Origin: Macrostomum lignano
Lineage: Eukaryota
DNA length: 63,617 bases
NCBI GenBank assembly: GCA_002269645.1
Contig: NIVC01004035.1
Coordinates: forward strand, 1-63,617
Direction: 5' to 3'
Under the pieces are notes generated by a model. It was not told the origin of the DNA and made no database searches. It saw nothing but the letters and a program-made list of their open reading frames with translations. The translations under genes were made by a program, and so were the position numbers. Below are positions 1 to 54,794 of the stretch, in pieces; the first letter of the stretch is position 1; the number at the start of each line of letters is the position of its first letter.

Positions 1-1690
1 GGTTTGTCGGGTTTGGGAATCATCTTATGGTTCCCTTTTTCCAGGCTTTGGGAAAAGTACCCAACGCAGGCAGCAAGTATTGAACAGCTTAGTAACCCTG
101 ATGGAGTTGGGGCTCAGGCCCTTCTGAGGACGACATTGGGGATCTTATCGGGCCTGGGGCTCCCCCGAGCCGAAGACTGCTTATAGCCATTGTAACATCT
201 ATGTTTATGATCTCAAGAAGGTCAGCCTCAGACACTTCTTGATTGTTGCCCTCAACAGCCTGGTTTTGTCTAAAGTAGGACAAACCTGAAAGATCCCCTC
301 ATGGGGCTTGAAGATTTCTTGCGATCGAGCATTGATGACTTTGTTATAGTACTCAGTCCAGGCTTAGGCTTGGGTTGCATTTGGAGTCAAGAAAATTCTG
401 AAAAGGTTCGCTTTTTCAGCCTCTGTTTCTGCAGTGGCGTCATTATGCTTCAGTGTAGGTAGATTATCCTTTTCTTGGCTTCGCCAGTCATCTTTTTCAC
501 GTCTTCCATAGTTATCGTCGCGACGTGGTTCGTGACGATAACTATTTTTGGCTATCTTTTTGCAGAGATCTTCATACTTTTTGTATCTGTGATTCTTGAT
601 AGCTACTCTGATATCTTTGGCCGCCTGATTGGCAAGAATCCTGAACGTATCGTCCCTAGTCTTCTTGAAGCATTTTCTAAGATGCCTCCTGTGCTTAATT
701 TTTCTAACTATGTCCGGTGGGAGTTGCTCTCTGGGGTCTCTGTCAGGGACCACCTTATTGATGGTGTCAGTGATAGCCGAAGACAGATTGTCCACGACTT
801 GGTCGATCTCTTCAGGGGTAGAGATATCAGATTTTAGAATTCTGATGTTGTCAAGCTTGTAGTAGCGAGAATCTGAAGGACTCCCAATCAGTCTTCCGAA
901 GCTTTTGAGCGGGAGCTTTGCCTTGTGGCAAGCGGGATCAATGGACAGAGATACAACTATGGGAAGATGGTCACTGTCTAGATCTTCACCCACAGAGACC
1001 TCACTGGAGAAGGGAGCTAGCCTGCTAGTGCACATAGCTAGGTCAATCACATTGCCTAGGTTTTTACCAGAGCGGTTATAGATCCGCGTGTAATCCCCGA
1101 ACTTGTTGAGAACGACAGGGGGATCCGCATGCGAATCGAGCCAATCAAAAAGCTGCCTCCCAGGGTAATTTTGAGCACTATCACCACCAAGAAACCCATG
1201 CCTGCAGTTGAGATCTCCTAACAGAAGGGAGTATGGGGAGGATAGACACTGCTCAAGCAGATCCGTCTTAAGACAGTCGGGGAGCCCGGGGCCCTATAGA
1301 ACAGCGTGATATCAAACTTCCTGAAAGAGTTGCCAGGGAGATGCACTGAAAACTTGATATACTCATGAGTTTGACTATCAAAATACTTTTTAACCCGTCA
1401 ATAATAAGATGACTCTTGTAAGCAATGGCAAGCCGCCGCGCCTGCAGTCTGGAACGTCTAGTCTCAGGATGGCGTATCCCTGTATGAAGAAATTATTGTC
1501 CTTGGTCAGACAGGTCTCGGAAAAAAGGCCTATATCAATGTTTTCGTCTCGAACCCACCTATAACCTCATGCAGCTTATTTGAAATCGTGTTACAGTTTA
1601 AATGCCCACTTTCAGCGTAGTAGAGCAGTTGTTTACCCTCGAACCATTCTTGGTAACTGAGCTGTGACTGTTACTGTCACACACTGACAT
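1..1690 (-). pseudogene. ORF2 of LINE copy 1: APE endonuclease plus N-terminal RT, multiple frameshifts
   Basis: Manual translation gives LKVGHLNCN, DIGLFSETC, GEDLDSDHLPI, PDRDPREQLPPDI and YFPKAWKKGTIRMIPKPDK, all aligning to ORF2 of copy 2. ATG at 1690. Confidence 0.85.
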
Positions 1691-1743: not shown

Positions 1744-2481
1744 TTACCATGCAGCTGCCCCACCATCAGCTCCCTGACCCTGTAGCTCCGAGAGTGAGCC
1801 CAGGACCTCAATGACAACGTGGACTGCGAGTTCCCCCGCAATCTGTGCGTCGCAGAGAAGCCCCGAGCCCATCTCCAGGATGCTACTCAAGGCCCTCATG
1901 GCCAGCCTGAGAATATCTGTTTGTGAGTAAATTTTTGAGCTACTGTTTTTGGTATGGTTATAATTGGTGGCCGCATAATTTGGTTTGGCCCAACTCGCCT
2001 TCGGTCCGTAGGTCACCGGCTCGGTCTGGTTAACAGTCGATGCTGACCCCGCGCCTGAGGCCACCGCTGCAGGGGCTGTCGCCTGAGCCACTGCAGGGGC
2101 CAGAACCGGGACGACCTCCACGGAGGCCATCGCCTGGACCGCCGCGGGGTGGGATGCAGGCTCGGTTGCCGGGTCAACCGCTGCAGAGGCCATCGCCGAG
2201 ACCGCCGCAGGGGGACCAGCCGGGCACGCGTTGTACATTGGAGGCAGTTGGCTTGTCACAGCTGATCGGCTTGCTGCTGCAGAGTAGGAGAACTGTTGCG
2301 GCCTCGGAAAGGCTTCTGGTAAGTTTTGCTGATATCAGTCGTAGTCGTACTGTTGTCGTAGACTGTGCACCCTCTCGCGCTCCCTTTCAGTTGCCAGGCG
2401 ATGTGCCCTAATAGCTACTGGGCATTTGTGAGAATACGACGTGTGCTCACCACTGCAGTTGGCACATTTTAATTTCTACGT
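1744..2481 (-). pseudogene. C-terminal part of ORF1 of LINE copy 1 (third zinc knuckle, Ala-rich linker, terminal helix)
   Basis: In frame after the stop at 2482: T*KLKCANCSGEHTSYSHKC. The terminal ILRLAMRALSSIL...AGELAVHVVIEVL aligns with VLEVVLQALTRLM...AGQLAIQAVTEVL of copy 2. Confidence 0.75.
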
Positions 2482-3807
2482 CTACGTTCTACGTGTTTTT
2501 TCTTTTTCTTCTTGGTTAGCTTTGTTGTTGTTGGTTGCCTGGTCAGCTGTACTGGCTGCCGGTATACTTTTTTCTGTTTGTTGCTGGGTGCTTTGGTTGC
2601 TTGGTTGTTGTTCAACGCCTTGGTTATTGGTTTGCTTAGTAGCTGTGTCTTGAATGCTTGATTGCTGTGTTGCTAGATTTTGATTGCTTGATGCCTTGGT
2701 TTGATTGCTTGATGCTTGAGGATTCGCTTGAGCTGTGACTGCCTGAGAGGCGTCTGCCACTTTGCTGCCTGATTTTGCTTTGGAGTCCTTGATTGTAGAA
2801 TTTAGCTTAATTTTTTCCAAGTTGGCGGCCTCCTCTTCTGCTTTTCGCCTGATGGATTCCTCGTCGTCCAGGTCGCAAGAAATTTGGTCTTGTGTGAACC
2901 GGACGCACGGATTAGGCGTTGGAGTGTCCGCGGCGGAGATTCTGTCGTCTTTAGTTAATCGGAATGTTAGGTTGATTCGCATATCTTTGCATCTGGGATC
3001 TTTAGGTACGGTATGTTGTAGATAAGGCTGAGTGCCACCGCTCATTATTAAGAGGCTGCCGCTGCTTAGCTTTTGCGAAAATACTATGTTAGTTGGAGAA
3101 GATTTTGAGCGAACTTGAAAGTCTCGGGCGGCTCCGAGTGACACTGAGGCGATGATCGGATCCTCTCCAAGTTCCTTTTCATCGTCAGAGTGCCAAGGAA
3201 TACCGATGTTGCCGTCTTTATAAAAATTAACTAGGCAGGAATTGAATAGTGGCAGTTTGTATTCGAGGTGGAGCCACGTGACTAGTCGAACTATTGCAGC
3301 ATGCCAGTTGTCATTGGCCTCGATTTTTGATCCACCGTAGGTGTAGCTGGGCCCAAACCAGGCGATCTGACGGGCCTCCGGTTTTCCGTTTGAGTGGTGG
3401 TGGTAGGCACTTGGAGCGATGTCTTTCATTATTATGTTGAAGAGAGTGGTTTCTGAGCTTTTTACCGCGTTCGGCGCATAAGTGATGATGCAGTTTTGCT
3501 GTAGAGTAACAGTTTTTTCATTAGTCCTGTCTGGCTTGGGAATGCTTAAAATTGCCAAGTTGTTTATGTCGTATTTCAGGCTTGAACACGCTGCCGGAGG
3601 CTGCCTGGAAGCAGAGCCGCCATCAGCTGATCCTGGAGAGGCATCTGGCAGAGATGTCCGTCTGGCCGGTGTTGCTCTGTTGTCGGTAGGTCCAGCTGAG
3701 GCTCGCATGTTAGGCTTTTTAGTAGGAGCAGCAGTAGCTGGTGACGAGGTGTCTCGCGCTGGCCTCTTCCTGTTATCGGTGATGTCAGTTTCTTTGATAG
3801 TGCTCAT
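2482..3807 (-). CDS. ORF1 N-terminal part: AlkB-family (ALKBH2/3-like) 2OG-Fe(II) dioxygenase plus Gln-rich linker
   Basis: FNSCLVNFYKDG, WHSDDE (HxD), IASVSLGAARDF, HTVPK (distal His) and RINLTFR (2OG-binding RxxxxxR); also the WFGP-Y-YGG substrate lid. Confidence 0.92.
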   Translation of the reverse strand: MSTIKETDITDNRKRPARDTSSPATAAPTKKPNMRASAGPTDNRATPARRTSLPDASPGSADGGSASRQPPAACSSLKYDINNLAILSIPKPDRTNEKTVTLQQNCIITYAPNAVKSSETTLFNIIMKDIAPSAYHHHSNGKPEARQIAWFGPSYTYGGSKIEANDNWHAAIVRLVTWLHLEYKLPLFNSCLVNFYKDGNIGIPWHSDDEKELGEDPIIASVSLGAARDFQVRSKSSPTNIVFSQKLSSGSLLIMSGGTQPYLQHTVPKDPRCKDMRINLTFRLTKDDRISAADTPTPNPCVRFTQDQISCDLDDEESIRRKAEEEAANLEKIKLNSTIKDSKAKSGSKVADASQAVTAQANPQASSNQTKASSNQNLATQQSSIQDTATKQTNNQGVEQQPSNQSTQQQTEKSIPAASTADQATNNNKANQEEKEKTRRT

Positions 3808-4702
3808 GACAATGCTAGTTAACTAATTAAAACAGTATTCTAATGGAGGTAGATGAGTGGTCAATATAAAACAGGGAGACCAATTAGCTATAAAACTAGT
3901 AAAACAGGGGCAGTTCTAAATAAATGTAAAGCAATTTAATATAATAAATCAGTTCAAGGTAAATGTCAGCAGTTCAAGCAATTGTCAGAGCGGGTTAATA
4001 TCGTCCGCAAGCCCTACACGCACTGTCTCGTTTAGAATAATGAAGAAGAAAAGGAAAACCGGTGATTTAAATATAAGTAAATTATAGATCGAAATAATTA
4101 ATTTAGATAAAGAAGGCAAAGAATAGCAAAAAAACCCTTACTGACTAATGATCTAGGAAGAAGGCAAAAAGAGAGAAGTTCCTAAATTAGAGGAAATAGA
4201 TTAGAAAAAATTTAGAGAATTTTGATGTGCTAACACAAGAAAAGATAGTAATACCTAATTTAGACTACTAAGGTTCAAAAATAGTGTAAATGCAAATTGC
4301 TAGTAAATTTTGCAAAAATGCACAAAAAGAGACGAATTAAGAAAAAATTTGAGCAGGGGTTCCCCAGGCCGAAGCCAAAGAATTGAGCAAAAAAAGGAAT
4401 TAAATAAAAACGCTAAGCTAACTCAGAGGACAGCGCGTCCTAGACCCAACCCGTGAAGAGGATCCCTAAAGCTTAAGAACCCGAATTAAAATAAATAGAG
4501 AGCAAAAGAGGTTGCTAACTAGAGAAAAAGTCCCTAAGACATACTAAAGGCCCAGGAAAACGAGAAGAAAAATAAATTTATTAATATAGAAGTGAAGACA
4601 GAATTTACAATGAACTTACTTTAGGTAGTTTTGAAGCGAATTTAGAGCAGTAATCAGACCGGCCGGGACGACGGCAGTGCGCGCAAGGCTTGGGAGAGGG
4701 GA

Positions 4703-4717
4703 AGAATAAAGGAAAAC
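4703..4717 (+). repeat. 15-bp direct repeat AGAATAAAGGAAAAC (TSD candidate, 3' side of LINE copy 2)
   Basis: Exact match to 11317-11331. Confidence 0.85.
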
Positions 4718-5551
4718 TATTTTTCATTTGGTAAGTAGGGGCTGTCAAGGGGCCCTGCGCATCAGCCCTGGGGAGGGCTCTTACGCAACTAATTTATTTT
4801 TTTGGTTTCCAGTTTGAGCGATACATTTAGTATTTTGTTCGAGTTGGAGAAATAAAACAAATATTTTCTAATAAATAATACAATAATTACATTTAAAAAC
4901 TTAAAACAAATAAAAGGGTTCAATTAATCAATATAGAGACAATTTAAAGCAGATGGTTGAAGTATTGAGTAAAACAAATAAATATAAATAAATATGATTG
5001 ATAAAACTAAAACAAATATTGGGGTGTAAATATGTACAGTGAATCACAAAGCAATAATGTTTTGAGTGTTTTGGTATAAAAATTGAGGCCAGATTATTTA
5101 CTACTATTGAGAGTAGGTAGACACCGCTATGATATAGGAACCTGCCTATGTTAGTTAACCTTACGAAAACGAAGGATTTCCTGGGAGGACATAGTGAATG
5201 TCGTAAGTATAGAGGTCCCTACCCGCAAGTAAGGGTTTTGCAAACTATTCAACAGCATCCCAACAAAGCAAGCCCAACCGGTAAGTCCAACATTCAGATA
5301 TTCTGTCTTAGTTATAATGATAGTTAGTGGACCTGGCCCCACAATAAACAACATTTTGGGTGTATAATGTAAAACTTGCTAGAGAAAGAGTATAAAAGAT
5401 AATACTGTGAGAGGGTATAAACGTAAAAACAGGGTGTGATTGGTACTGTACTTTGAATGACAAGTGGTTAGCATAGCATTACGAGTATCATTAGTATTCC
5501 CGACCCCGGACAGAGGCGCTCGAGTTTTAGAATGAATCACATTAGCGTTAA

Positions 5552-8014
5552 TCATCTCGTAATTTGTCTGAGTTTAGTAGTAAAGGGGACCCTGAACCCT
5601 GGCCTGGCCCATTCTTTGGTGTCATTTTTGAACCCATGGATTTCACTCTCCAGGGCTTTTTTGTACAATTTTTTAGCAAGATAGAGGAGTCGATCCTGAA
5701 CCATGATGTCAATCTTTGTGACCTGGTGTAAGTATGTGATTTTAGTATAAGGCGGAGCATCTATAGAGAGGCAAAGAGCCTTATTTTGCAGAATTTGTAG
5801 CTTGTTAACCAGGGAAGCCAGTAGATTGATGAGCACCGGAGCGCCGTAAGTCATTGTGCTTTCAATGTAAGATTTATAGATGAGGCGAAGAGCCAGTTGC
5901 GAAATCCTGGAGTTCTTAGCTATCCTAGCTAGGGCAGCCATTTTGGCTGTCGAAGACCCAGCTACCTTGTCGATATGGGCCCTAAAGTTAAGCTGTTTGT
6001 CAAGAACCATCCCTAGGAAGGTGACGGAATCATAGTACTTGATTTTGTCTTGTCCAAGTTTAATTGGAGGATCGTCTGGACCTGTCTTGTTCCCATTAGC
6101 TTTGAAAAAGGAAATGGCTTTGCTTTTGGAGGGATTGATGACAATGCCCAAATTGTCAAGCCACTTTTTGAGGACAATAAAGTAGGAGTTAAGCCTTTTA
6201 GCGGACATCGTAGATTTTGTGGCAGAGGCCCATACTGCTAAGTCGTCAGCGAACTGACTAAAGCGGACTTTGGCTGATGTTAGGCTGATGGGTCTATAGC
6301 TTTCCACGAGATTTTTGGATTTGTTTGGTTTAGGGATCATCCTAATGATGGCCTTTTTCCATTGTTTAGGGAAGTATCCTATGAGAAAACTGTAGTTGTA
6401 AATTTTTGCGAGCGCTCTGATGGAGTCTGGGCCGAGACCATATTTCAAAACCATGTTAGGAATTCTATCCGGACCGTGAGCTCCTCCTGACCTAAGTTTT
6501 CTGCTTTCCCAGAGCACGTCCTGGTCAGTAATGTTAAGGATATCGTTTTCGATATCTTCTTTATCTAGATTATCTGGGTTCGCGTGCTCTTTATGGTATG
6601 AAAGTGCCGCAATTATATTGTTATGGGTTTTGAAGATCTCATGATCTTTGTACTTACTGACCTTTTCATAGATTAGCGAGTCGTGGTTGGGGTGAGATTG
6701 CATTTGATCTTTAAGAAAGTCGCTGAAGAGTGAAGCTTTTTCTGCCTCAGTCTCGGCATGCGAATCTTTGTAGACTAGAAGGGGATAGTTGATCATTTTG
6801 GACCTTTCTCCTGTCATCTTTTTGATGTCAATCCAAAATTTTTTGGGTTCCTTTTTATAACTATTTTCGGCAACTTTGTGGCATAGATCCTCGAATTTCC
6901 TATATCTATGCATGCGTATAGCATTTCGAATTTCTTTAGCTGCTTGATTGGCTTGAACCCTGAAGTCGTCTATTCTAGTTTTTTTGAATAATTTTCTAAG
7001 TTTCCTCCTATGCTTAATTTTGTTAATAATATCTGGGGGAAGCTGTTCCCTAGGGTCCCGGTTGGGTACAACATCCTCAATGGTGTCATGAATGCACTGA
7101 TTTAGCAGATCAACCGCTTTGTCTAGGTCCTCAGGTGTGGAGAATCTGCGACTGAGAAGCTGTTGGTTGCTAAGTTTATCCTGAAGGGTCCCTCTAAAGG
7201 TTTCCCAGTCAGTGTTCCAAAAGCTTTTAGTGGGTTTTTTGCTCAGCTTACAGTTAGGATTTAAATAAATTTTAATGATAATGGGGAGGTGGTCGCTATC
7301 TAGATCTTCTCCCACAATAACGTTGCTGGTATGTTTAATTAGCTCCGGGGAACAAATTCCTAGATCAAGCACGTTCCTAAGGACTGAGCCACTACGGTAG
7401 CTGACTCTGGTACAGTCCCCATAATCGTTAAGAATGGTTGGTGGGTTTGGATGCGAGTCAAGCCTATCAAACAGCTGCTTGCCAGGATAGTTAGTTTGGG
7501 AGTCACCACCGAGGGCTGGGTGGTTGCAGTTAAAGTCCCCGACAACTAAGGTCGAGGGATTAGAGAATAAATGGTCAAGAAGTTGGGTGTTAAGCCGTGT
7601 TGGAGTCGGGTTCCTGTAGAAGAGGACCACGTTAAATTGCTTAAGTTTGTTATTTTTAAGATGAACTTTAAAACTGATAAGCTCGTGGTTGCAGTTGTCA
7701 AAAAATTTTTCAACATTCATAATTTCTAAATGATTTTTATAGACAACTGCAAGTCCTCTTCTACAGTTAGGGACGTCAAACCGGAGCGTGGCGTACCCTG
7801 GTAAGTGAAATTTGTTTTTTTCCTCTAGGCATGTTTCAGAGAAAAGCCCAATGTCTAAGTCTTCTTTGTTGATCCAGGATATTATCTCATAGAATTTGTT
7901 GCTAAGCCCGTTGCAGTTGAGATGTCCAATGTTCAGAGTGTCCCGCACAACAGACTGTTTACCCGGCCCATTATTATCAGGGGAATTATTAGATGAGTTG
8001 AAATTTGATATCAA
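5552..8014 (-). CDS. ORF2: APE endonuclease plus reverse transcriptase with in-frame deletion of the central RT motifs; no RNase H
   Basis: HLNCNGL, FSET, VVGDFNCNH, LDLG, DSDHLP (APE); GPDRIPN, YRPISLTS directly joined to QFADD, YLG-like FLGMVLDKQLNF (RT). The QGSxLSP region is missing. Confidence 0.9.
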   Translation of the reverse strand: MISNFNSSNNSPDNNGPGKQSVVRDTLNIGHLNCNGLSNKFYEIISWINKEDLDIGLFSETCLEEKNKFHLPGYATLRFDVPNCRRGLAVVYKNHLEIMNVEKFFDNCNHELISFKVHLKNNKLKQFNVVLFYRNPTPTRLNTQLLDHLFSNPSTLVVGDFNCNHPALGGDSQTNYPGKQLFDRLDSHPNPPTILNDYGDCTRVSYRSGSVLRNVLDLGICSPELIKHTSNVIVGEDLDSDHLPIIIKIYLNPNCKLSKKPTKSFWNTDWETFRGTLQDKLSNQQLLSRRFSTPEDLDKAVDLLNQCIHDTIEDVVPNRDPREQLPPDIINKIKHRRKLRKLFKKTRIDDFRVQANQAAKEIRNAIRMHRYRKFEDLCHKVAENSYKKEPKKFWIDIKKMTGERSKMINYPLLVYKDSHAETEAEKASLFSDFLKDQMQSHPNHDSLIYEKVSKYKDHEIFKTHNNIIAALSYHKEHANPDNLDKEDIENDILNITDQDVLWESRKLRSGGAHGPDRIPNMVLKYGLGPDSIRALAKIYNYSFLIGYFPKQWKKAIIRMIPKPNKSKNLVESYRPISLTSAKVRFSQFADDLAVWASATKSTMSAKRLNSYFIVLKKWLDNLGIVINPSKSKAISFFKANGNKTGPDDPPIKLGQDKIKYYDSVTFLGMVLDKQLNFRAHIDKVAGSSTAKMAALARIAKNSRISQLALRLIYKSYIESTMTYGAPVLINLLASLVNKLQILQNKALCLSIDAPPYTKITYLHQVTKIDIMVQDRLLYLAKKLYKKALESEIHGFKNDTKEWARPGFRVPFTTKLRQITR

Positions 8015-8045
8015 GTTAACGCTAAACGTAATTTAATTGTCAGGT

Positions 8046-10788
8046 TCAGGTTTCATCTCCGCCCGCTTGCGCGGCTTCGGTGTCCCCTGTCCCTGAATCA
8101 GGTCCCCTTCGATTCCTGAGTGCTGCCAGGACTTCAGTCACTGCCTGGATCGCGAGTTGCCCCGCTTCCCATTCAGTGAGCATCTGCCCCGGATTAGTGC
8201 CCATGAGCCGAGTGAGTGCCTGAAGTACAACCTCGAGCACCCCCATCCGGGAGATTAGGCCCCTCTCACTTGATTTGCGCGTGTCATTGGCGTTTTCAAC
8301 TCCTAGATTGGGCGCGGCCACGGAGTCGGAGGCAACTGCCGGCAGCGTGGGCGGATTGGCGGAGATTTGGATTGCCGCCGGATTGGTCAGAGCAGTTCGA
8401 TTCGCCGGCGCTTCGGCTGGTGGGGCATCGCTAGCGGCAGAGGCAGCGGCGGCGGCGGCAGCGGCGGCGGCACGGTTGGAATACGCGATAGGACCCAGGA
8501 TTGGCTTGATGAGTCCAGTTCGCATTGGTCGCATTGCGTCAGCGTAGGATAGCGGTCCTGGTACCCCAAAGGCCTCCCCTAGGGACCGACTAGGTTTTGC
8601 TTCTTCTCTTTGTGCTCTGATTTTTTCGTGTGCTTTTCTAGTTGCAATTTCGTTTGCTTCCTTGATTTTTTGACATTTGAATGAAAACTGCGGGTGCTCG
8701 CCCCCGCAGTTGGCGCATTCGAACTTGCGGTCCTTGGGGCAGTCGGCTGAGAAGTGCTCCCCTGCGCATTTGTTACATCTGTATACTGACGCAGTGCATT
8801 TATTCTCATGGTGCCCTAATCTTTGGCACTTCATGCACTGGATGGCTTTGACAGGTGGAAGATTAATCGACTCCTCGCACCTGAACCTGCTGAAGCCTAG
8901 ATGGACGCCGTGCTCAATGCATCTCTCCATTGCGCCCTTACTCTTCGTGAAGAGGCGAACATGCGGTGATGGTTCACCTGTTGCCTTGGAGATGATGCGC
9001 ACGGCGCCATCAATCGGAATTTGCTGCTCTGACTCTACCAGGTGTTTGGCTAACTCTTTAGCGTCCACCGCAATGGGGACGTGCTTGACAATGAAACAGT
9101 ACACCTGAGGAGATTTAAGAGGTGCACGCACCTGATCGTCCCCTTGTTTTACTGGCCTCTTGGCTGCCATGCGTCTTGTAATTTCAAATTCATTAATTTT
9201 GTTGGTTTTAAGTGGTGCTGTTAGTAATTTATTGTAATCCTTAGGATGTTCTCGAGTTACAATGTAGCCTGAGCTATGGTACAGATCTTTGACCGATTTA
9301 ATTCTAATTTCAGGAAAGTTGTTTTTTAGAAACCATTCAAATTTGATGGGATCCTTGCCTTCATGCTCAATTTCGAAGATGACTGGAGCTGAGTTTTTAG
9401 GTTTTGAATTGTCATTAGTTCTTAGTTGATAGTTGCTGCTTGCAGTGTTAGGTTGGCTGGTTAGATTAGAGCTAAGTTGGCTAGTTTGGCTTTGAGTTTT
9501 AGATTGATTTAGCTGATTATTTTGGCTAGTTTGGCTAGGTTGGCTATTGCAGGTTGTTTTAGTTTCAGTTTGTTGTTGCTGTTGTGTTGTTGTCGGCGGC
9601 GTCAAGTGGATGAGCGTTTGCTGTGAGTTGTCAGATGGCGGCTGCTGCGGCTGCATTTGCATGCTGGCTTGTTGCTGCAAGTTGTGCTTGCTAATGGTTG
9701 ATTGCTGTTCGTGAGCAATTTGCATGTTTTTTTGTTGAGATATTTGAGTGGTTGGCTGCTGACTGCTAGGTTTGCGCCCCGTGCTACTGTTTGAACGCGA
9801 TCTAATTCGTCTCAAATTTTCCGCTTCCAGCTCTGCCCGTCGGCGAACCGAGTCTTCATCATCAAGATCGCAAGTGATGCTGTTGTCGACTGGTTGGATA
9901 CAAGGATTTGCCTGGTCAGAGACAGGAAGTTCTTCCGGGATCCTAGCATCGTGCGTAAGTCTAAACGTGAGGTTGACTCTGAGCTCTTTGACTTTGGGGT
10001 CTTTGAGGACCGCGTGTTGAAGGTGCGATTGTGTTGCACCGCTCATTACCAGCAGCGAGCCACTGGCGAGTCTTTGAGACCATGCGATGTTAGTTGAGCC
10101 TTGGGGCGCATGTGGAAGTCGCGCGTTGCGCCAATCGAGATGGATGCGATAGTCGGGTTAGGCCCTAACTCTACCTCGTCATCAGAGTGCCAGGGGATGT
10201 TGATCGATCCGTCTTTGTAGAAATTGATCAAACATGAGTTGAAGACGGGAAGCTGGTACTCGACTCTGAGCCAGGTGGCTAGGCTAGTGACAAGGGGATG
10301 CCAGTTGTCATTGGCACTAATTTTAGTACCACCATAGGTGTACTCTGGTCCAAACCAAACGATTTTCCGGGCTTCCGGTCTACCGTTGGTGTGGTGGTGA
10401 AAGGCTTTCGCCTGAATCTCGTCAACGAGAATTTTCAAAATTTGATTGTCGCATTTTTTAGAGCCGATGGATGGTAACTAATGTTGCAATTATTTGGTAG
10501 ATTGTATGATTTGCTGTCTGATTTGTCTGGTTTTGGTAGTCTAATAATTGTTGTTACACCTTCAGCTTTCATGACTTCTAGACTACCCCTTTTAGAAGGA
10601 GGCAGCTCACCTTTTGAGGTACCAGGTGGAGTTTCTGGCAGTGGCGCGTTTGACGGAGACAGCATGGTTCGTTGTTCGGATCTGCGGACAGGGCCGGCAG
10701 AGTCTCGGTTGTTCACCTTCTTGGTCGACACCGTCGGCGGCGAGTCAGTGTCTCGTGAGCACCGTTTGCTATTAATTTCGATTTCCAT
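8046..10788 (-). CDS. ORF1 (about 910 aa after correcting 2 frameshifts): AlkB dioxygenase, Gln-rich linker, RRM-like region, three CCHC knuckles
   Basis: Three consecutive ORFs (10435-10788, 10046-10438, 8046-10046) join by single-base shifts. WHSDDE, HAVLKD, RVNLTFR; knuckles CMKCQRLGHHENKC, CNKCAGEHFSADC, CANCGGEHPQFSFKC. Confidence 0.88.
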
Positions 10789-11316
10789 AGGCCAAGATAC
10801 AAGAAAAGTCCTTAAAACAAATTAAAACTTAAAACTTAAAACTGTATAAATAAAATTAAAACTTAAATAATACTACTTTAAGTAGACCTAGGTCGGCTAA
10901 ATACAAGAGAATGTCCTTATTCTATTACGCTACTGAAAAACCTAAACAGCAGCTTCCTGGCGCCTCGTTGCAGAAGTCGTGCGCCGCCGGCCGGCCGGTT
11001 GCAGACCGCTGGGCGAAGCCTGGCGCCGCCTGAAGCCGCAGCTGAGCCGCCGAGCCGCCGCCGCCGCCGAGCCGCCTGACCGAGCCGTCGAGCCGAGCCG
11101 CCAAAAGTCGCCGAGAGTCGCCGAGAGCCGAGAGCCGCCGAGAAGTGCCTGCTCGAAGAGCGATGCTGCAGCAGAAGCCGGTGCCGGACGCCAGGTAGGT
11201 GGCCACCCCAGATGCCAACTCGCAGTGAAGCAAGAGATACCCGAAGGCCCACACTGTGGATACCTGTAGTATCTCAATACTTTAAAGCTTGTTGGTTACC
11301 AAGGCAACCAGCAACC

Positions 11317-16176: not shown

Positions 16177-16569
16177 AGAAATATTCACTTAGACTATAAA
16201 TATCCTTTTCGTTGGACGAACGTTTTGGGCAGCCTGGGCATGTCCTAATTACTCGTAGTTAGTTTTTCTCTATGATCTTAAAAGCTTTTCTTTTTATTTT
16301 CGTACTTCTATAATTTACAAACGCAAACAGTAGCAAACTTACGATAATACTACGACTATCTAGGTAATAGGCTTCGAACCGAAGCCCCTTTATAATCCGA
16401 AAACAATGAAAACTAAACTTCAATGCTTTTGTCATTGTCCAATCAAATTTGGCCAATCAGCGAACCGCAAGCAAAAACGTGGACATAAACTCGTAACTAT
16501 ATAAACAGGAGCTGGGACTTGTTGAGAAGGTGTCTTTTTGTTGGAAATTTAATTAACAAAAAATCAATC

Positions 16570-17325
16570 ATGAATACCAATTATCCTCTTATAATGCTGC
16601 TCTGTGTAGCTCTTATTGTTAGAACAGCGACAACTATAGTCATGTTCACCACTGCCAAAATGCGGAGCAACTCGGCTCTGGTTGCCATGGATACTCTGAC
16701 TGGCATCGGCAGGCTGAAATGCGCCGAGCTCTGCACTCTAAGATCTGACTGCTATGGCTTCAGCTGGCTGATGCAGGGTCTGTGCAGATTTTTCAACTTC
16801 AATGCTTTCCACGACGCCTGGATGAGCTCGGATGTCTGCGATGTTTACACCGCCAGGAATGGTGAGTTTGAGAGCACGGTGCACATACATGTATGTAGCT
16901 ATGTATGCATGCAGTTGTGCTATAATTGCATTCTAGATGCAGTGAAGCTGAGCTTCATCAGCTGCAACCAGAGCTCAGTCCAGATGGATGGAGTTTGCGA
17001 GCGAGCATTCGATGGCGATACGAACCAGGACTACTATTATCGATCCTGCACCCACACGGCTGACGGTCAGCTGGGCTGGTGGGAGTCTCAGCTGTCCCGA
17101 CCCGCCTTTGTCTCGCATGCCACAATCTACAACCGTCAGGACTGCTGCAGCTACCGACTGAAAAAGCTGTCCCTGCAGGTGGACGGCTCTGAGTGCTACC
17201 GACTGAACACAGAGAAATTTTCCGTGGCCACCTTCCAGTGCAACGTCTTCGGCACCAAATTCGGAATATTCAGTTTGCTGGACAATTCAATCAACATCTG
17301 TGAAGTGGAGATCTTTGGATTTTGA
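16570..17325 (+). CDS. Secreted PAN/apple + F-type lectin (fucolectin) domain protein; 2 exons (16570-16861, 16937-17325)
   Basis: Signal-like N-terminus; PAN pattern CAELC...C.GF...C; AFDG...CTHT...WW...NRQDCCSYRL gives an exact HX26RXDX4R fucose-binding motif; 75-nt GT-AG intron. Confidence 0.85.
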   Translation: MNTNYPLIMLLCVALIVRTATTIVMFTTAKMRSNSALVAMDTLTGIGRLKCAELCTLRSDCYGFSWLMQGLCRFFNFNAFHDAWMSSDVCDVYTARNGEFESTVHIHVCSYVCMQLCYNCILDAVKLSFISCNQSSVQMDGVCERAFDGDTNQDYYYRSCTHTADGQLGWWESQLSRPAFVSHATIYNRQDCCSYRLKKLSLQVDGSECYRLNTEKFSVATFQCNVFGTKFGIFSLLDNSINICEVEIFGF

Positions 17326-23126: not shown

Positions 23127-24187
23127 ATGAACCGCACCCGTAGCCAGTCAGCCGATTCCGTCCCCACAACTGTGCCAGCACTGCGAGGGAAACTAAAGGA
23201 GCTTGGTTTGCCAACCTCTGGCAACAAAGCAAAACTAGTCCAAAGGCTTCGCGCCCATATTCAAGACGTGGAGACCTCTGTCGAGAGTGACGAGCTGACG
23301 AACGTTCAGGCCATTCTGCGAGCTACAGGGCAGAACTCGGCGGTAGCGAGCAGCGGGGGCAGCCCCCCAAATCGGCGACAGGTCGAGAACGGTGGGTCTG
23401 GCGCGGCTGGCGGCCTGGACGAACAGCTGCTGGAGGCGGAGAAGCGAATCCGTCTGCTGAAGCTGCGCAAAGAAGAAGCGCAGCTGGAATCCGAGTTCGC
23501 GCAGCTACGGGTCGGCCGTTCTGAGGCACGTGATGTACCGGGTGAGTTGCTAAATTGCCTAACTGGATGTGTGCAGCATGAAGTTGGGCAGCAGCATGAG
23601 AACATGGGAGCCTCAGGGAGAAGTACCAGTAGCGTCTACCGAATCGTTGACTTCGTCAGCAAGCGCAAGCAGTGTCTTCTAGGCCAGAGTAAGTCTAAAG
23701 AAGTGGCGGTCGAGGCGCTGTCGTTAGGCGATTGGGTGACGGGCAATGCGCAGGCGATGCTTCAGATGCTGACTGACGGGCGTCTAGTCAGACTGGATCA
23801 GCATGGTCGATTGGATGTGGCAGAGCTCAGAGACTATTTCAGGTACACCGCACGCATTGGCGAGTTGTTGGACCTGGGCTTCGACAAGAGCCGTGTGATG
23901 AGATTTGATGACGAGTGCCGGCTCAGCCAAACGTCTGATGGCAAGTGGGAGTCGCACAGCTCGGACCTGAGTCTGGTTGCGGCGTACCTCATGGCTCCCC
24001 AGAAGCAGCAATCGGGGGTGGTGCCCAGAAGCGCAATCAACTGGTTTGCTTCGACTACAACAGGATACGCGGGTGCGAACGCAAGAGCTGTCGGTTCCTG
24101 CATCGCTGCCGAAGATGCGGCCTGGCGCACTCTGAGGCAGCCTTCCACCGCGACGAATCGAGCGGTGAGGAGAAACCGCAACACTGA
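23127..24187 (+). CDS. Ngaro ORF1 (gag-like) with N-terminal SAP domain and C-terminal Cys/His zinc finger; one frameshift at about 24015
   Basis: LRGKLKELGLPTSGNKAKLVQRL (SAP); CFDYN...GCERKSCRFLHRCRRCGLAH in the -1 frame after a G-run. Confidence 0.75.
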
Positions 24188-24259
24188 CTCGATCATAGCG
24201 CGAATTTTATTCCTCCTGTTTTATCCTCTGATCTCAATCTGGCCCAGTGGCAGGCGGAG

Positions 24260-25800
24260 TTGTCCAAGCTGGATCTCCCGCCCGGTCGGATGGCTTTTAT
24301 CCTTGATGGCGTTGCTAGTGGCTTTCGCATCACCAATCGTCAGATGCATGGCAACGAGCTGGTTGAAGTGGCAAACTACTCATCGGTTTTTAAGCACCAT
24401 GACAGAGTTGCGCGTCAGATTGCTAATGAGCTTCGTCTCGGTCGTTATCGTCTCTGTGCTGCTGGTGACAAACCTCGCATAGTCAGCGCCCTTGGTGCGC
24501 TGCCGAAGTCCAACGGTGGCGTTCGCTTAATCCATGACTGCAGCCGGCCGCAAGGGAAGTCTGTCAACTCCGCTTACGAGAGCGAGCAGAGACTGCGTTT
24601 CACCTGTGTCCAGAACTTTGCTAAGAGGCTTAAGAAGAATTACTTTATGTGCAAGGTCGATCTAAGCGAAGCCTATCGTTCATGTGGGATCCATCCTGAC
24701 GACCAAAAGTTTACCGGTTTGAAGTTTCGGCTAGGTAGCGATGCTTGCGACACCTACATGGTGGACACGCGCCTGCCATTTGGTGCTGCTGCTTCCGTCA
24801 CGGCTTTCTATCATCTCAGCGAGGCGGTCAAGTTGATGATGGTGCACCGCGGCTTCGTCAATACTGAGGCCTATCTGGACGATTTTGCCTTTTGCGGTTT
24901 GCAAAACGAGTGCGAGGCCTTCTTTAATGTGTTGACGTCGCTGATGACCAGACTGGGCTTCACCGTGAATTGGACGAAGTGTCAGCGGCCTTCGCAAAGG
25001 ATGACGTTTCTCGGTGTGGAGCTCGACACCGTCAAGGGCCTGAAGCGGCTTTCAGACGAGAAAGTGGAGAAACTTTTAGAGCAACTGGACGATGCTGCTG
25101 CCAAGGATCGCATCAGCAAGCAAAGTTTACAGCAGATCATCGGCAGGCTGGTGTGGGCTTCGCAGGTGATCGAATGCGGTCGCCCCTTTCTTCAGGACCT
25201 GATTTCGCGCTCTAACAATTTGGCCGTCGGTCAGCAAGATGAGGTGGATGCGGCCCTGCGTAGTCAGCTGCGCTGGTGGAAGTGTGCTCTGCTAGCTCAA
25301 AGGTGGAAGACTCTCTGGTTCAATGGCGACTTCGATGCCGCGATCGAGTCGGACGCCTGCCTGGTGGGCGGCGCTGCCGTGCTGCGGTTGCCGGGGGCGT
25401 GAGTGACTGGCGCTACGTTAATTGGGATCTCGACGCGGATGCTGTTTTTCGGGATCTGCCTATCAATTACAAGGAGGCTGCGATACCTCTGATGGCGTTG
25501 CTGTCGTGGCGGGACCGCCTGCACAACTGTCGGCTGTGCATCTACTGCGATAATATGGCAGCGTGCTGTATTATCAACAATGGGGTCTCCAAGTGCCCTC
25601 TGGTGTTGAGGCTGTTGCAGACGGTGGCGCTGCTTTGCATTCGTCAGAACATTCAGCTGCGTGCTTACCATGTGCCAGGGCCGTTTCAAATTTTTGCTGA
25701 CGCCGCGTCTCGGCTGCACGAGGGCAGTCAGTTGTTGAATTTTTTGCTGCGCTTTTATGGCTCATTGATGCGTCTCACCAATTGCTCGCTTTCCCGGCAC
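24260..25800 (+). CDS. Ngaro reverse transcriptase plus RNase H; one frameshift at the G-run at about 25395
   Basis: RLIHDCS, KVDLSEAYR, LPFG, YLDDF, FLGVELDT; RNase H IESDAC, INYKE, YCDN, ADAASR. Confidence 0.9.
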
Positions 25801-26828
25801 ACGCTTTCTGCTGCCACATCCGCTTTTCTCCGTTTTCAGGTCGCCAGACTGCGCCAGACCACCTCAGCCACCGAGCCCGTGAACTACTCGGTTCCTCCTA
25901 CGCGGCCCGCTCGAAAAGCGCCATCAGCTCACACGTGCGGTCCTGGCGCGCGTACTGCTCAGCCAAGGGACTCGACCCCGCCGGGTGTACTGTGTCCACG
26001 CTGCTAAACTACCTGGCTGGCCTCACGGGCACGCGCCTGCGAGCCTACAGTAGCATTCGCGGTCACGTCAGCTCGCTTTCACTGTGGTTTCGGCTGAACG
26101 GCGCTCAGGACCTGACAAAGCATACCCTCACCCAGCATCTGCTGCGGGGCTGCAAGCGAGCGCTGGGGCTTCAGGTCAACCAGAAGCTACCAATGTCTCC
26201 GTCGGTGCTGCAAAAGCTTTGGTCTCTGGTTGACAAGGGCGACAATCGGCAACTGGCCTGCTGGGCGGTCACCATCACTGCCTGGTGGGGAATGCTGCGA
26301 AAATCATCACTCCTTCTATCGTCGCCTCAGTTGGGTAGTGGGATGAAGGTGCAGAATCTGACACCTCACCGTTGCGGCCTCCTCTTAAGCGTGGACTTTG
26401 GCAAGACTATTCAGTTCCGTGATCGAGTCCACCACGTCCTGCTTCCGAAGTTCCCCGCCTGCCCCGCGCTCTGCCCGGTAGTGGCGATTCGCCGACATCT
26501 GTGTGTCAACAAGCTGGCGATGGCCGAGGCGCCACTCTGGTCCTTCATCGATCGCAATGGACAGCGGCGCCATCTAGCTGCTCGGGACTTGGACCGGTTT
26601 CTTGAATCTAAGCTGCAGAGGGCTGGGTGTGGCGGCAAGCTCTACTCGGCTCACAGCCTGCGTCGAGGTGGAGCCACCTGGGCAGCTCGCATGGGCCTGC
26701 CGGTGGCGGAGATCCAGCGGATCGGCGACTGGAAGAGTTCGGCGGTGGAGCGCTACTTGCCCCGCTCGGGTGTTGCCACTGCTGCGGCCTCTCTGCATTT
26801 TTCTTCCGCCCTTAGTGCTCATTTTTGA
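25782..26828 (+). CDS. Ngaro tyrosine recombinase
   Basis: GMLRKS (R), FGKT (K), HSLRRGGATW (HxxR), GDWKS (W) and ERYL (Y). Confidence 0.92.
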   Translation: MLAFPAHAFCCHIRFSPFSGRQTAPDHLSHRARELLGSSYAARSKSAISSHVRSWRAYCSAKGLDPAGCTVSTLLNYLAGLTGTRLRAYSSIRGHVSSLSLWFRLNGAQDLTKHTLTQHLLRGCKRALGLQVNQKLPMSPSVLQKLWSLVDKGDNRQLACWAVTITAWWGMLRKSSLLLSSPQLGSGMKVQNLTPHRCGLLLSVDFGKTIQFRDRVHHVLLPKFPACPALCPVVAIRRHLCVNKLAMAEAPLWSFIDRNGQRRHLAARDLDRFLESKLQRAGCGGKLYSAHSLRRGGATWAARMGLPVAEIQRIGDWKSSAVERYLPRSGVATAAASLHFSSALSAHF

Positions 26829-33302: not shown

Positions 33303-46882
<13,580 letters not shown>

Positions 46883-54205: not shown

Positions 54206-54221
54206 AATATTAAAATAAAAA

Positions 54222-54668: not shown

Positions 54669-54794
54669 TGAGGTTTAAAACCCCACTTTATCCAGCTTCA
54701 TAAACCTAGCGATACTTATAGGATGTAGAAACAGTTCAACTTTTCTATCAGGGTGGTCACCCTCAAAGTTTTTTTTTTATTTTAGAGAAAAAAA

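What the first reader, a model, noticed from the sequence alone, without database searches (positions are those of the whole stretch)
2482..10788. LINE family whose ORF1 is an AlkB dioxygenase-Gag fusion, catalytically intact in two diverged subfamilies
Seen: both LINE copies have an ALKBH2/3-type domain at the ORF1 N-terminus. HxD...H and RxNLTFR are conserved although linkers and UTRs have diverged beyond alignment, and a post-AlkB helix is also conserved (CDLDDEES/DS.RR.AE.EA.NL). In copy 2 the domain precedes an RRM-like region and three CCHC knuckles. Established: ALKBH2/3 and bacterial AlkB reverse m1A/m3C in ss nucleic acids; plant RNA virus replicases carry AlkB domains that act on RNA; DNMTs create off-target 3mC repaired by ALKB2. 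Inference: the element packages its own demethylase into the RNP to clear RT-blocking m1A/m3C from its RNA or cDNA, or to counter a host methylation defence. Retention in two subfamilies argues for selection rather than a one-off capture. I do not know of a described AlkB-Gag ORF1 in I/Jockey LINEs, but could not search.
Basis: partly seen in the sequence, partly recalled or inferred. Interest (0 to 1): 0.92.

Follow-up and report, generated by a model that had tools for sequence, protein, structure and literature searches.

The report
LINE retrotransposons carrying an AlkB demethylase
A clade of flatworm (Macrostomum lignano) LINE retrotransposons has fused an ALKBH3-like nucleic-acid demethylase domain to the front of its RNA-binding ORF1 protein and kept it under strong selection, probably to clear methyl lesions that block copying of its RNA, and I found no published description of this.

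Summary
Two minus-strand LINE copies (ORF1 starts at 3807 and 10788) begin with a 2OG-Fe(II) AlkB domain (Pfam E 7.5e-28 and 8e-18). Its closest solved relative is human ALKBH3, and all iron and 2-oxoglutarate ligands are present. Both window copies are dead. Copy 2 has two 1-nt deletions inside AlkB and an internal RT deletion. Copy 1 lost about 240 aa (RRM-like region and first two knuckles), has stop codons, and runs off the window.

The trait belongs to the family. Macrostomum lignano proteins and public assemblies yield at least six diverged lineages with the same ORF1 layout: AlkB, linker, RRM-like modules, three CCHC knuckles. Where flanks exist, an endonuclease/RT ORF2 follows. Their ORF2s cluster at 37-56% identity, against 19-29% to LINEs without AlkB.

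AlkB is the best-conserved part of the element (dN 0.25-0.28, synonymous sites saturated). A retrocopy or one-off capture is excluded.

AlkB also occurs in a LINE with a coiled-coil ORF1 and in a Penelope-like element.

The likely function is removal, in cis, of RT-blocking m1A/m3C from the template RNA or single-stranded DNA intermediates. This is inferred, not shown.

The only retroelement precedent found is an orchid Ty3/Gypsy element.

The parts
8046..10788 (-). Copy 2 ORF1: N-terminal low-complexity region, AlkB, Q-rich linker, two RRM-like modules, three CCHC knuckles and C-terminal helices. It reads in three frames because of two 1-nt deletions.
   Evidence: ORF list; tblastn to P0001-P0003; frame analysis; motif coordinates.
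9948..10581 (-). Copy 2 AlkB (ALKBH3-like 2OG/Fe(II) dioxygenase) domain. NSCLINFY 10217-10240, HSDDE 10175-10189, second His 10014-10016, RVNLTFR 9960-9980.
   Evidence: Pfam PF13532 E=8.2e-18 on the middle fragment; alignment; coordinates.
10453..10453 (-). Frameshift 1 in copy 2 AlkB. One T is missing: AAT-TGC reads AATGC, relative to P0001/P0002.
   Evidence: Three-frame translation; tblastn frame change.
10098..10100 (-). Frameshift 2 in copy 2 AlkB. One G is missing from AAG-GGC (…RPK|GSTNIAW…). Both frameshifts lie in homopolymers and could be long-read assembly errors.
   Evidence: P0003 reads through this point without a shift.
9804..9872 (-). Post-AlkB acidic/basic helix of copy 2 (CDLDDEDSVRRRAELEAENLRRI). 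It is shared only with copy 1's subfamily.
   Evidence: The helix was modelled on the copy 1 sequence (residues 247-275 of that model). It is absent from L002 and P0052/53.
8838..9389 (-). Two RRM-like modules of copy 2 ORF1 (start motifs APVIFEIE… and VYCFIVKHVP…).
   Evidence: Conserved with P0004, P0052-55, L002 and the AlkB-less ORF1s P0040-42. The AF2 model has low confidence but shows two beta-alpha-beta-beta-alpha-beta units.
8673..8837 (-). Three CCHC zinc knuckles of copy 2 ORF1 (CMKCQRLGHHENKC, CNKCAGEHFSADC, CANCGGEHPQFSFKC).
   Evidence: Direct reading. The Cys/His columns are invariant or nearly so in the alignment of 11 ORF1s.
8112..8261 (-). Conserved C-terminal helical segment of copy 2 ORF1.
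   Evidence: Aligned across lineages; coordinates.
5552..8014 (-). Copy 2 ORF2: APE-type endonuclease plus reverse transcriptase. Most of the RT core is deleted (junction SYRPISLTS|AKVRFSQFADD at 6242-6301). There is no RNase H domain.
   Evidence: Pfam Exo_endo_phos_2, Exo_endo_phos and a partial RVT_1 match to profile positions 145-203 only; comparison with the 944-948 aa ORF2s of L002, L004 and L006.
10789..11270 (-). Copy 2 5' UTR (approximate upper limit), containing a GC-rich tandem repeat at 11035-11143.
   Evidence: The N-terminus of P0002 is a translation of 10994-11101; tandem repeats; sequence. The true 5' end was not determined.
2482..3807 (-). Copy 1 ORF1, 5' part, open for 441 aa: N-terminal region, intact AlkB, helix and Q/N-rich linker. 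It ends at stop codons 2482-2484 and 2476-2478, at an internal deletion.
   Evidence: P0004 (same subfamily, 89-95% identity) shows that about 240 aa are missing here.
2947..3579 (-). Copy 1 AlkB domain. NSCLVNFY 3220-3243, HSDDE 3178-3192, second His 3013-3015, RINLTFR 2959-2979. The helix follows at 2809-2877.
   Evidence: Pfam E=7.5e-28; PDB ALKBH3 E=4e-26; AF2/Foldseek; coordinates.
1744..2475 (-). Copy 1 ORF1 remnant after the deletion: third knuckle (KLKCANCSGEHTSYSHKC) and C-terminal region, with a further stop at 2335-2337.
1..1607 (-). Copy 1 ORF2 remnant (endonuclease and start of RT). It is frameshifted and cut by the window start.
   Evidence: tblastn with copy 2 ORF2: 46% identity over residues 47-468, then a frame change.

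Best explanation
The region holds two defective copies of two related families of a non-LTR retrotransposon clade of Macrostomum lignano and relatives.

The ancestral ORF1 protein of this clade has, in order:
- a variable N-terminus;
- an ALKBH3-like Fe(II)/2-oxoglutarate dioxygenase domain;
- a low-complexity linker;
- two RRM-like modules;
- three CCHC knuckles;
- C-terminal helices.
ORF2 encodes an APE endonuclease and a reverse transcriptase, with no RNase H.

Shown here: the architecture, its presence in at least six deeply diverged lineages, a single origin within this clade, full conservation of the metal and co-substrate ligands, and purifying selection at least as strong as on ORF2.

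Inferred mechanism:
1. ORF1p coats the RNA that encodes it, so the fusion tethers many copies of a single-strand-specific demethylase to the element's own RNP.
2. There the enzyme oxidatively removes Watson-Crick-face methyl groups (1-methyladenine, 3-methylcytosine).
3. The substrate is the template RNA and/or the single-stranded DNA intermediates of target-primed reverse transcription.
4. Removing these lesions relieves stops of the element's reverse transcriptase and raises the yield of full-length insertions.
For: Domain identity:
- Pfam PF13532.
- ALKBH3 is the best PDB sequence hit.
- The AF2 model (pLDDT 86) has ALKBH3/ALKBH2 as top Foldseek hits, at TM 0.81-0.87.
- The domain has no RKK loop of the kind seen in the fish ALKBH2 sequence P0034; that this loop is the ALKBH2 dsDNA-binding loop is own knowledge. 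It has the HSDDE and VPK…R pattern of the ALKBH3-named spider sequences.

Family trait:
- Intact AlkB-RRM-CCHC ORF1s of 757-962 aa (P0052-P0055).
- An EN/RT ORF2 follows in L002, L004, L006 (two copies) and L009.
- The ORF2s of these elements are 37-56% identical to each other and 19-29% identical to AlkB-less LINEs.

Selection:
- dN is 0.25-0.28 in AlkB. Other segments range from 0.38 to 0.96.
- Third codon positions are only 34-41% identical.
- The AlkB C-terminal half is 41-68% identical between lineages, against 33-50% for the RRM-CCHC region.
- The N, Y, H, D, H, R and R ligands are 100% conserved wherever the region is present.

Single capture: Leu at -2 of the second His occurs in 10/11 of these AlkBs and in 0/154 others. 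The NJ tree recovers a clade.

Mechanistic plausibility:
- AlkB treatment removes m1A/m3C/m1G before cDNA synthesis and increases full-length reads (PMC5066629).
- An orchid Ty3/Gypsy AlkB is an active RNA demethylase in vitro (PMC9289625).
- From my own knowledge: ALKBH3 prefers ssDNA/RNA; AlkB domains of plant RNA virus replicases repair RNA; and LINE ORF1 proteins are generally taken to bind their encoding RNA in cis, which step 1 of the mechanism assumes and which was not tested for this family.
Against: - No biochemical or expression data exist. The substrate (RNA or DNA; m1A/m3C or m6A) is inferred from similarity alone.
- Both window copies are inactive.
- Deep nodes of the AlkB tree have only 17-29% bootstrap support.
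- The N-terminal lid region is shorter than in cellular ALKBH3, so specificity could differ.
- Whether flatworm LINE RNA carries m1A/m3C is unknown.
- Most LINE clades do without such a domain.
Confidence: 0.55

Rival explanations
1. Epitranscriptomic counter-defence. The ORF1-borne AlkB erases a regulatory mark that the host places on transposon RNA (m6A, or deliberately installed m1A) and that would otherwise trigger decay, sequestration or chromatin silencing. It would not be repairing accidental damage.
For: The orchid Ty3/Gypsy AlkB demethylates m6A in vitro, and its authors propose exactly this role (PMC9289625). The same paper's introduction reports that m6A lowers endogenous-retrovirus RNA levels in mouse ES cells. 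AlkB has been acquired repeatedly by unrelated retroelements (L007, L008), which fits an arms race.
Against: The domain resembles ALKBH3/2, not the m6A erasers: ALKBH5 reaches only TM 0.53-0.59 (normalised by target length), against 0.81-0.87 for ALKBH3/2. For human L1, m6A promotes retrotransposition and ALKBH5 suppresses it (PMC7873242 abstract). No host mark on flatworm LINE RNA is known.
Confidence: 0.2
2. DNA-side repair. The domain acts on DNA rather than RNA. It would remove 3-methylcytosine or 1-methyladenine from the nascent single-stranded cDNA or the nicked target, for example lesions made off-target by DNMTs, so that second-strand synthesis and integration can finish.
For: ALKBH3 and ALKBH2 are DNA repair enzymes (PDB titles). 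M. lignano is reported to retain DNMT1/3 and ALKB2, and DNMTs make 3mC off-target (PMC9246332). Target-primed reverse transcription exposes single-stranded DNA.
Against: The domain is fused to the RNA-binding ORF1 protein, not to ORF2, which works on DNA. It has no RKK-type loop. This rival overlaps the best explanation and is not exclusive of it.
Confidence: 0.15
3. Not a functional element feature. The AlkB would be a host ALKBH retrocopy or exon accidentally joined to two LINE copies (or a gene-model artefact), or a catalytically irrelevant nucleic-acid-binding module.
For: Both window copies are degenerate, and copy 2's AlkB is frameshifted. Several database proteins are clearly imperfect gene models of repeats (P0002 translates a 5' UTR).
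Against: The same in-frame position is seen in at least six lineages with open 757-962 aa ORF1s. AlkB divergence co-varies with ORF2 divergence. The domain has the lowest dN in the element. All catalytic residues are invariant. A clade-specific Leu is absent from 154 other AlkBs.
Confidence: 0.03

Closest known systems
Human ALKBH3 (and ALKBH2): AlkB-family Fe(II)/2-oxoglutarate dioxygenases that remove 1-meA and 3-meC
   Same: Same fold (TM 0.81-0.87). Same HxD…H iron triad, the same N/Y residues and the same RxxxxxR 2-oxoglutarate ligands. ALKBH3 is the best sequence match (E 4e-26), at 30-33% identity.
   Different: Here the domain is the N-terminal module of a retrotransposon Gag-like ORF1, not a free-standing host repair enzyme. 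It has a shorter N-terminal lid hairpin, a shorter beta-loop, and Leu instead of the near-universal Trp two residues before the second His. Activity is untested.
Type I LINE ORF1 proteins (RRM plus CCHC knuckles) of the I/Jockey group. The AlkB-less relatives found here are L001/P0040, the fish protein P0041, P0042, and L003 with a PRE_C2HC domain
   Same: The RRM-like modules, three CCHC knuckles, the SYA motif and the C-terminal helices align with P0040-P0042. The bicistronic ORF1/ORF2 layout with APE endonuclease and RT is the same.
   Different: About 210 aa of AlkB domain plus a linker precede the RRM modules. The ORF2s form their own cluster (37-56% identical within it, 24-29% to L001 and L003) and lack RNase H.
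Phalaenopsis (orchid) Ogre/Tat Ty3/Gypsy elements that encode an AlkB-type m6A RNA demethylase (PMC9289625)
   Same: A retrotransposon that has fixed an AlkB-family dioxygenase, interpreted as acting on its own RNA.
   Different: That element is an LTR retrotransposon of plants. [quoted passage not shown] The acquisition is recent and restricted to one genus. Here the element is an animal LINE, the domain is ALKBH3-like and fused to Gag/ORF1, and the acquisition is old enough for ORF2s to have diverged to 37% identity.
AlkB domains inside replicase polyproteins of plant RNA viruses such as Flexiviridae (own knowledge, not tested here)
   Same: An RNA-templated replicator carries its own AlkB to clean its template. 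The reported activity is on m1A/m3C in RNA.
   Different: Those are RNA viruses of plants with the domain embedded in the replicase. Here the domain is in a nucleic-acid chaperone protein of a reverse-transcribing element.
CR1/L2-type LINE ORF1 proteins carrying an esterase (SGNH) domain (own knowledge)
   Same: A precedent for an enzymatic, non-nucleic-acid-binding module in a LINE ORF1.
   Different: A different enzyme class, in a different LINE clade.

Membership tests
AlkB family of Fe(II)/2-oxoglutarate dioxygenases (Pfam PF13532) | Sequence match above the curated family threshold | tested here: met
   98.5 bits against a cutoff of 31.2 for copy 1, and 65.8 bits for the copy 2 fragment. 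Related elements score 73-110 bits.
AlkB family of Fe(II)/2-oxoglutarate dioxygenases (Pfam PF13532) | Double-stranded beta-helix fold with an N-terminal nucleotide-recognition lid | tested here: met
   The AF2 model has pLDDT 86. Foldseek's top 25 hits are all ALKBH3 or ALKBH2, at TM (target-normalised) 0.77-0.87 over about 200 columns. The lid hairpin is shorter than in cellular homologues.
AlkB family of Fe(II)/2-oxoglutarate dioxygenases (Pfam PF13532) | HxD…H iron triad, plus N/Y and RxxxxxR 2-oxoglutarate ligands | tested here: met
   Invariant in both window copies and in all related retroelement AlkBs where the region is present.
AlkB family of Fe(II)/2-oxoglutarate dioxygenases (Pfam PF13532) | Oxidative demethylase activity on nucleic acids | not testable with these tools
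   Needs a recombinant protein assay.
ALKBH3 subtype (single-strand/RNA-preferring) as opposed to ALKBH2 | Closer to ALKBH3 than to ALKBH2, and lacking ALKBH2's RKK duplex-binding loop | tested here: inconclusive
   Sequence E is 4e-26 for ALKBH3 against 2e-14 for ALKBH2. There is no RKK, and the HSDDE and VPK…R patterns match ALKBH3. In the NJ tree the clade sits next to animal ALKBH3-like proteins, but deep nodes have bootstrap below 30%. Structural scores for ALKBH2 and ALKBH3 are equal. I call it ALKBH3-like, not an orthologue.
Non-LTR (LINE) retrotransposon, APE-endonuclease type | ORF2 with an N-terminal APE-type endonuclease followed by reverse transcriptase | tested here: met
   Exo_endo_phos(_2) plus RVT_1 in copy 2 ORF2 (with the RT internally deleted) and in the full ORF2s of L002, L004 and L006. 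L009 has the endonuclease only, because the contig ends.
Non-LTR (LINE) retrotransposon, APE-endonuclease type | Element termini: 3' poly(A) or simple-repeat tail and target-site duplications | tested here: inconclusive
   No second copy of either family is in the window to define the ends. The 3' region (4000-5551) shows no clear tail.
I/Jockey group of LINEs (type I ORF1) | ORF1 with RRM domain(s) followed by CCHC knuckles | tested here: inconclusive
   The three knuckles are unambiguous. The RRM fold is supported only by secondary-structure topology in a model of pLDDT 55, and no Pfam RRM hit was found.
I/Jockey group of LINEs (type I ORF1) | RT phylogeny placing the element within the Jockey or I clade | not tested
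   No named reference RT set was available. Indirect evidence only: there is no RNase H domain, and the nearest AlkB-less ORF2 (L003) has a PRE_C2HC ORF1, a domain I associate with Jockey-type gag proteins (own knowledge). The next-nearest ORF2s carry RNase H, as I-like elements do.
Orchid Ty3/Gypsy AlkB elements (PMC9289625) | LTR retrotransposon with an m6A-eraser-type AlkB in an extra ORF | tested here: not met
   The element has no LTRs and no integrase or protease. It is a LINE with an ALKBH3-like domain fused to ORF1. It is a functional analogue only.

The most novel reading that the evidence does not exclude
ALKBH3-like demethylase modules have been recruited repeatedly, and possibly passed between unrelated classes of RNA-templated replicators. 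The cases are:
- this Jockey/I-like LINE clade;
- a LINE with a coiled-coil ORF1 (L007);
- a Penelope-like element (L008);
- an orchid Gypsy element;
- plant RNA viruses.

This would mean that Watson-Crick-face methylation of RNA (m1A/m3C) is a general barrier to reverse transcription in animals that has not been recognised so far. It could arise as damage or be installed by the host as a defence. On this reading, transposons carry their own eraser as a counter-measure.
Probability: 0.3. Interest if true: 0.88.

Novelty: new variant of a known kind. Interest (0 to 1): 0.72.

Why it matters
LINE ORF1 proteins are usually treated as RNA chaperones or packaging proteins. An enzymatic nucleic-acid repair or demethylation domain that has stayed fused to ORF1 while ORF2 diverged to 37% identity shows that template methylation limits retrotransposition strongly enough to select for a dedicated eraser.

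That links three fields: alkylation repair, the epitranscriptome and transposon control.

It also offers a tractable system. According to a review read here (PMC9246332), M. lignano retains DNMT1/3 and ALKB2. From my own knowledge it is a transgenic flatworm model.

There is a practical consequence too. These abundant TE-borne AlkB genes are annotated as 'Fe2OG dioxygenase domain-containing protein'. They can contaminate presence/absence calls of ALKB2/ALKBH3 in comparative studies of DNA methylation.

AlkB in a Penelope-like element and in a second LINE type suggests convergent or horizontal recruitment.

Tried and rejected
- Genomic copies of the window proteins: exact-sequence look-ups of P0003 and the 441-aa ORF returned nothing. 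A genome-wide census of M. lignano was therefore not possible. Family evidence comes from protein databases and the contigs that could be fetched.
- Formal dN/dS: NG86 and YN00 mostly fail because synonymous sites are saturated. I used relative dN and position-specific identity instead.
- AlkB phylogeny: the NJ tree recovers a retroelement clade, but bootstrap support is only 17-29%. I rely on the Leu synapomorphy and the congruence with ORF2 instead.
- RRM fold: the model from a 6-sequence alignment has pLDDT 55. It was not used for fold search.
- Organism behind the Logan runs: a literature search for the SRR accessions found nothing, and the contigs show no close nucleotide similarity to M. 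lignano sequence (only a 77-78% match of 78 bases and 64-68% matches between L002 and L006).
- One literature query was badly designed and uninformative.
- The small ORFs between ORF1 and ORF2 in L004 and L011 are not similar to each other, so I dismissed them.
- Spider proteins of 581-619 aa (P0019, P0021, P0133, P0182) are host ALKBH3-like genes with long tails, not LINE ORF1s.
- I considered that P0003 might be the same locus as copy 2. It reads through frameshift 2 but lacks segments that the window has, so it is another copy, another assembly version, or a spliced gene model. This is unresolved.
- I did not build any repaired full-length element sequence.

Full report
**1. What is in the window**

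ORF listing and Pfam scans show two non-LTR retrotransposon copies on the minus strand.

Copy 1:
- It opens at 3807 with a 441-aa ORF. Residues 137-283 match PF13532 (2OG-FeII_Oxy_2) at E=7.5e-28.
- The ORF ends at stop codons 2482-2484 and 2476-2478. The same frame then continues (2475-1744) with only the third CCHC knuckle and the C-terminal region, plus a further stop at 2335-2337.
- Protein P0004 belongs to the same subfamily (89-95% identity). It shows that about 240 aa are deleted here: the RRM-like region and the first two knuckles.
- The ORF2 of copy 1 (1607 down to 1) is frameshifted and runs off the window.

Copy 2:
- Its ORF1 spans 10788-8046 but reads in three frames. Two single-base deletions lie inside the AlkB domain. 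One T is missing at about 10453 (AAT-TGC) and one G at about 10098-10100 (AAG-GGC).
- Both deletions are in short homopolymers. They could be long-read assembly errors, and this cannot be decided here.
- Downstream of AlkB come an acidic/basic helix, a Q-rich linker, two RRM-like modules, three CCHC knuckles and C-terminal helices (coordinates).
- Its ORF2 (8014-5552) has an APE-type endonuclease. The RT core is deleted between SYRPISLTS and FADD.

At the nucleotide level only the AlkB segment (66% identity) and one ORF2 piece (71%) align between the two copies. Its phrase 'catalytically intact' applies to the encoded motifs, not to the copy 2 reading frame in this window.

**2. Identity of the domain**

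- The best solved-structure relatives are human ALKBH3 (E 4e-26), then ALKBH2 (2e-14).
- An AlphaFold2 model built on a 39-sequence alignment has mean pLDDT 86.
- Foldseek's first 25 hits are all ALKBH3 or ALKBH2 (TM 0.77-0.87 over about 200 residues). ALKBH6, E. coli AlkB and ALKBH5 are clearly worse.
- The 2-oxoglutarate ligands (N, Y, RxxxxxR) and the iron triad (HxD…H) are all present.
- The domain has no RKK loop of the kind present in the fish ALKBH2 sequence P0034. That this loop is the ALKBH2 duplex-binding loop is my own knowledge. It has the HSDDE and VPK…R patterns of the spider ALKBH3-like sequences.
- I call it ALKBH3-like. Orthology is not established, because deep tree nodes are weak.

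**3. Source organism and family**

- The closest database proteins (P0001-P0004) are UniRef or MetaClust entries of Macrostomum lignano. P0003 is essentially copy 2's ORF1 with an uninterrupted AlkB.
- A full-library HMMER search with P0003 found four intact ORF1 proteins with the complete layout: P0052 (757 aa), P0053 (962), P0054 (892) and P0055 (843). They are 32-37% identical to the query.
- The same search found a third M. lignano lineage: P0057/P0198 (GenBank PAA54533.1 and PAA61448.1).
- Wherever DNA could be fetched, the AlkB-ORF1 is followed by an endonuclease/RT ORF2:
  - L002 (ORF2 946 aa);
  - L004 (948 aa);
  - L006, which is M. lignano contig NIVC01002892.1 with two adjacent copies, one with an open 944-aa ORF2;
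  - L009, where only the endonuclease is seen because the contig ends.
- None of these ORF2s has an RNase H domain.
- Their ORF2s are 37-40% identical to each other (56% for L002 against L006).
- They are only 24-29% identical to the nearest AlkB-less LINEs. These are L001, which has an RRM/CCHC ORF1 and an RNase H, and L003, which has a PRE_C2HC ORF1.
- The AlkB-less ORF1s P0040-P0042 align with the RRM-like, knuckle and SYA regions. AlkB was therefore added to the front of a conventional type I ORF1.

**4. Selection and single origin**

- Between copies 1 and 2, dN by segment is as follows:

| Segment | dN |
|---|---|
| AlkB | 0.25-0.28 |
| post-AlkB segment | 0.38 |
| ORF2 fragment | 0.45 |
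| N-terminus | 0.52 |
| ORF1 tail | 0.77 |
| linker | 0.96 |

- Third codon positions are only 34-41% identical, which is saturation. dN/dS for AlkB is therefore roughly 0.15 or lower.
- Among four lineages with all parts available, the AlkB C-terminal half is always the best-conserved ORF1 segment (41-68%, against 33-50% for RRM-CCHC). Its divergence ranks the pairs as ORF2 does.
- All seven ligand positions are invariant in every retroelement AlkB that covers them.
- A Leu two residues before the second His occurs in 10 of 11 AlkBs of this clade and in none of 154 other AlkBs, of which 124 have Trp.
- The NJ tree recovers the clade, but with low bootstrap support.
- Together these results reject three alternatives: a retrocopy inserted in two copies, neutral decay, and an annotation artefact.

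**5. Beyond the finding**

- L007, from a JGI metagenome, is a LINE whose ORF1 (P0132) joins an AlkB domain to a coiled coil and an 'RNNLLVSGIP' segment. That segment reminds me of L1-type ORF1 (a recollection, not tested).
- Its ORF2 has EN plus RT and is only 19-26% identical to the clade above. Its AlkB keeps the cellular Trp and the long loop. This points to an independent capture.
- L008 is a Penelope-like element (ORF2 with RT plus GIY-YIG). Its upstream 1012-aa ORF contains an AlkB that is closer to the LINE AlkBs (E 7e-40) than to the cellular AlkBs examined (about 1e-25 to 1e-29).
- AlkB recruitment by retroelements is therefore recurrent.

**6. Mechanism**

*Shown:* the architecture, its conservation, and its ALKBH3-like character.

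*Established elsewhere:*
- AlkB enzymes remove m1A, m3C and m1G from the Watson-Crick face, and doing so before cDNA synthesis increases full-length products (PMC5066629).
- An orchid Gypsy AlkB is an active RNA demethylase (PMC9289625).
- From my own knowledge: ALKBH3 prefers single-stranded substrates; viral AlkB domains repair RNA; and LINE ORF1 proteins are generally taken to bind their encoding RNA in cis (not tested for this family).

*Inferred:* the fusion concentrates a single-strand demethylase on the element's own RNP and removes RT-blocking lesions from the template RNA and/or the ssDNA intermediates.

*Rivals:*
- Erasure of a host regulatory mark. This is less likely, because the domain is not of the m6A-eraser type and m6A favours human L1 (PMC7873242).
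- A purely DNA-side role at integration.

**7. Novelty**

- Full-text searches combining AlkB with non-LTR retrotransposon, ORF1, Repbase, LINE, Penelope-like, Macrostomum or reverse transcriptase found no description of an AlkB-bearing LINE or Penelope-like element.
- The only retroelement precedent found is the orchid Ty3/Gypsy case.
- Repbase and Dfam could not be searched, so a prior database entry cannot be excluded.
- I rate this a new variant of a known kind. LINE ORF1 modularity and AlkB capture by RNA replicators are both known. This combination, its age and its recurrence are not.

**8. Limits**

- There is no genome-wide copy census and no formal clade assignment.
- Element termini are undefined.
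- The host organism of the assembly contigs is unknown.
- There are no functional data.

Noticed in passing
L008 (Logan SRR19430222 contig, 7477 nt): ORF 2120-5158 and ORF 5266-7398: A Penelope-like element (RT plus GIY-YIG ORF) whose upstream 1012-aa ORF contains an AlkB domain. That domain is more similar to the LINE AlkBs (E 7e-40) than to the cellular AlkBs examined, which suggests transfer between retroelement classes or capture from the same source.
   Followed up: partly
L007 (JGI metagenome 3300086443 contig, 4609 nt): ORF1 248-2401, ORF2 2456-4609: A different LINE (ORF2 only 19-26% identical). Its ORF1 is AlkB plus a coiled coil plus an L1-like 'RNNLLVSGIP' segment. Its AlkB keeps cellular-type features (Trp, long loop), so it looks like an independent capture.
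   Followed up: partly
M. lignano proteins P0001-3, P0057, P0093, P0198; review PMC9246332: TE-borne AlkB ORFs are annotated as 'Fe2OG dioxygenase domain-containing protein'. A review states that M. lignano retains ALKB2 alongside DNMT1/3. Such calls could be confounded by these retrotransposon copies. I did not check whether a true host ALKB2/3 exists.
   Followed up: no
window 23127-26828 (+): A DIRS-like retroelement: a SAP-domain ORF, a reverse transcriptase ORF (24260-25402) and a tyrosine recombinase ORF (25782-26828, Phage_integrase match), in a GC-rich stretch (Pfam).
   Followed up: partly
window 53168-58408 (+): A Maverick/Polinton-like DNA transposon remnant: an rve integrase (53168-54205) and a protein-primed type B DNA polymerase split over two ORFs (55770-57386 and 57353-58408).
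   Followed up: partly
window 37333-38928, 40976-42046, 43432-45477, 45815-46962: Long arrays of short tandem repeats that create spurious long ORFs in several frames (…SVCLSVCL…, …FPVRLPV…, …YLSIYLSI…). One of them, on the minus strand at 45815-46882, encodes an (AEETAEEK)n repeat ahead of a non-repetitive C-terminus. Strong GC and AT skew over 36-48 kb.
   Followed up: no
window 16519-17325 (+): An ORF with an F5/8 type C (discoidin/galactose-binding) domain. It is possibly an exon of a host gene among the repeats.
   Followed up: no
L004 4346-4717; L011 3269-3643: Small ORFs of 123-124 aa lie between ORF1 and ORF2 in two related lineages. They share no detectable similarity, so they are probably fortuitous.
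   Followed up: yes
P0071 (811 aa, source not looked up): A protein that joins PRP39-type HAT repeats to a C-terminal AlkB domain. It is unrelated to the LINE family and may be a host gene fusion or a gene-model merge.
   Followed up: no
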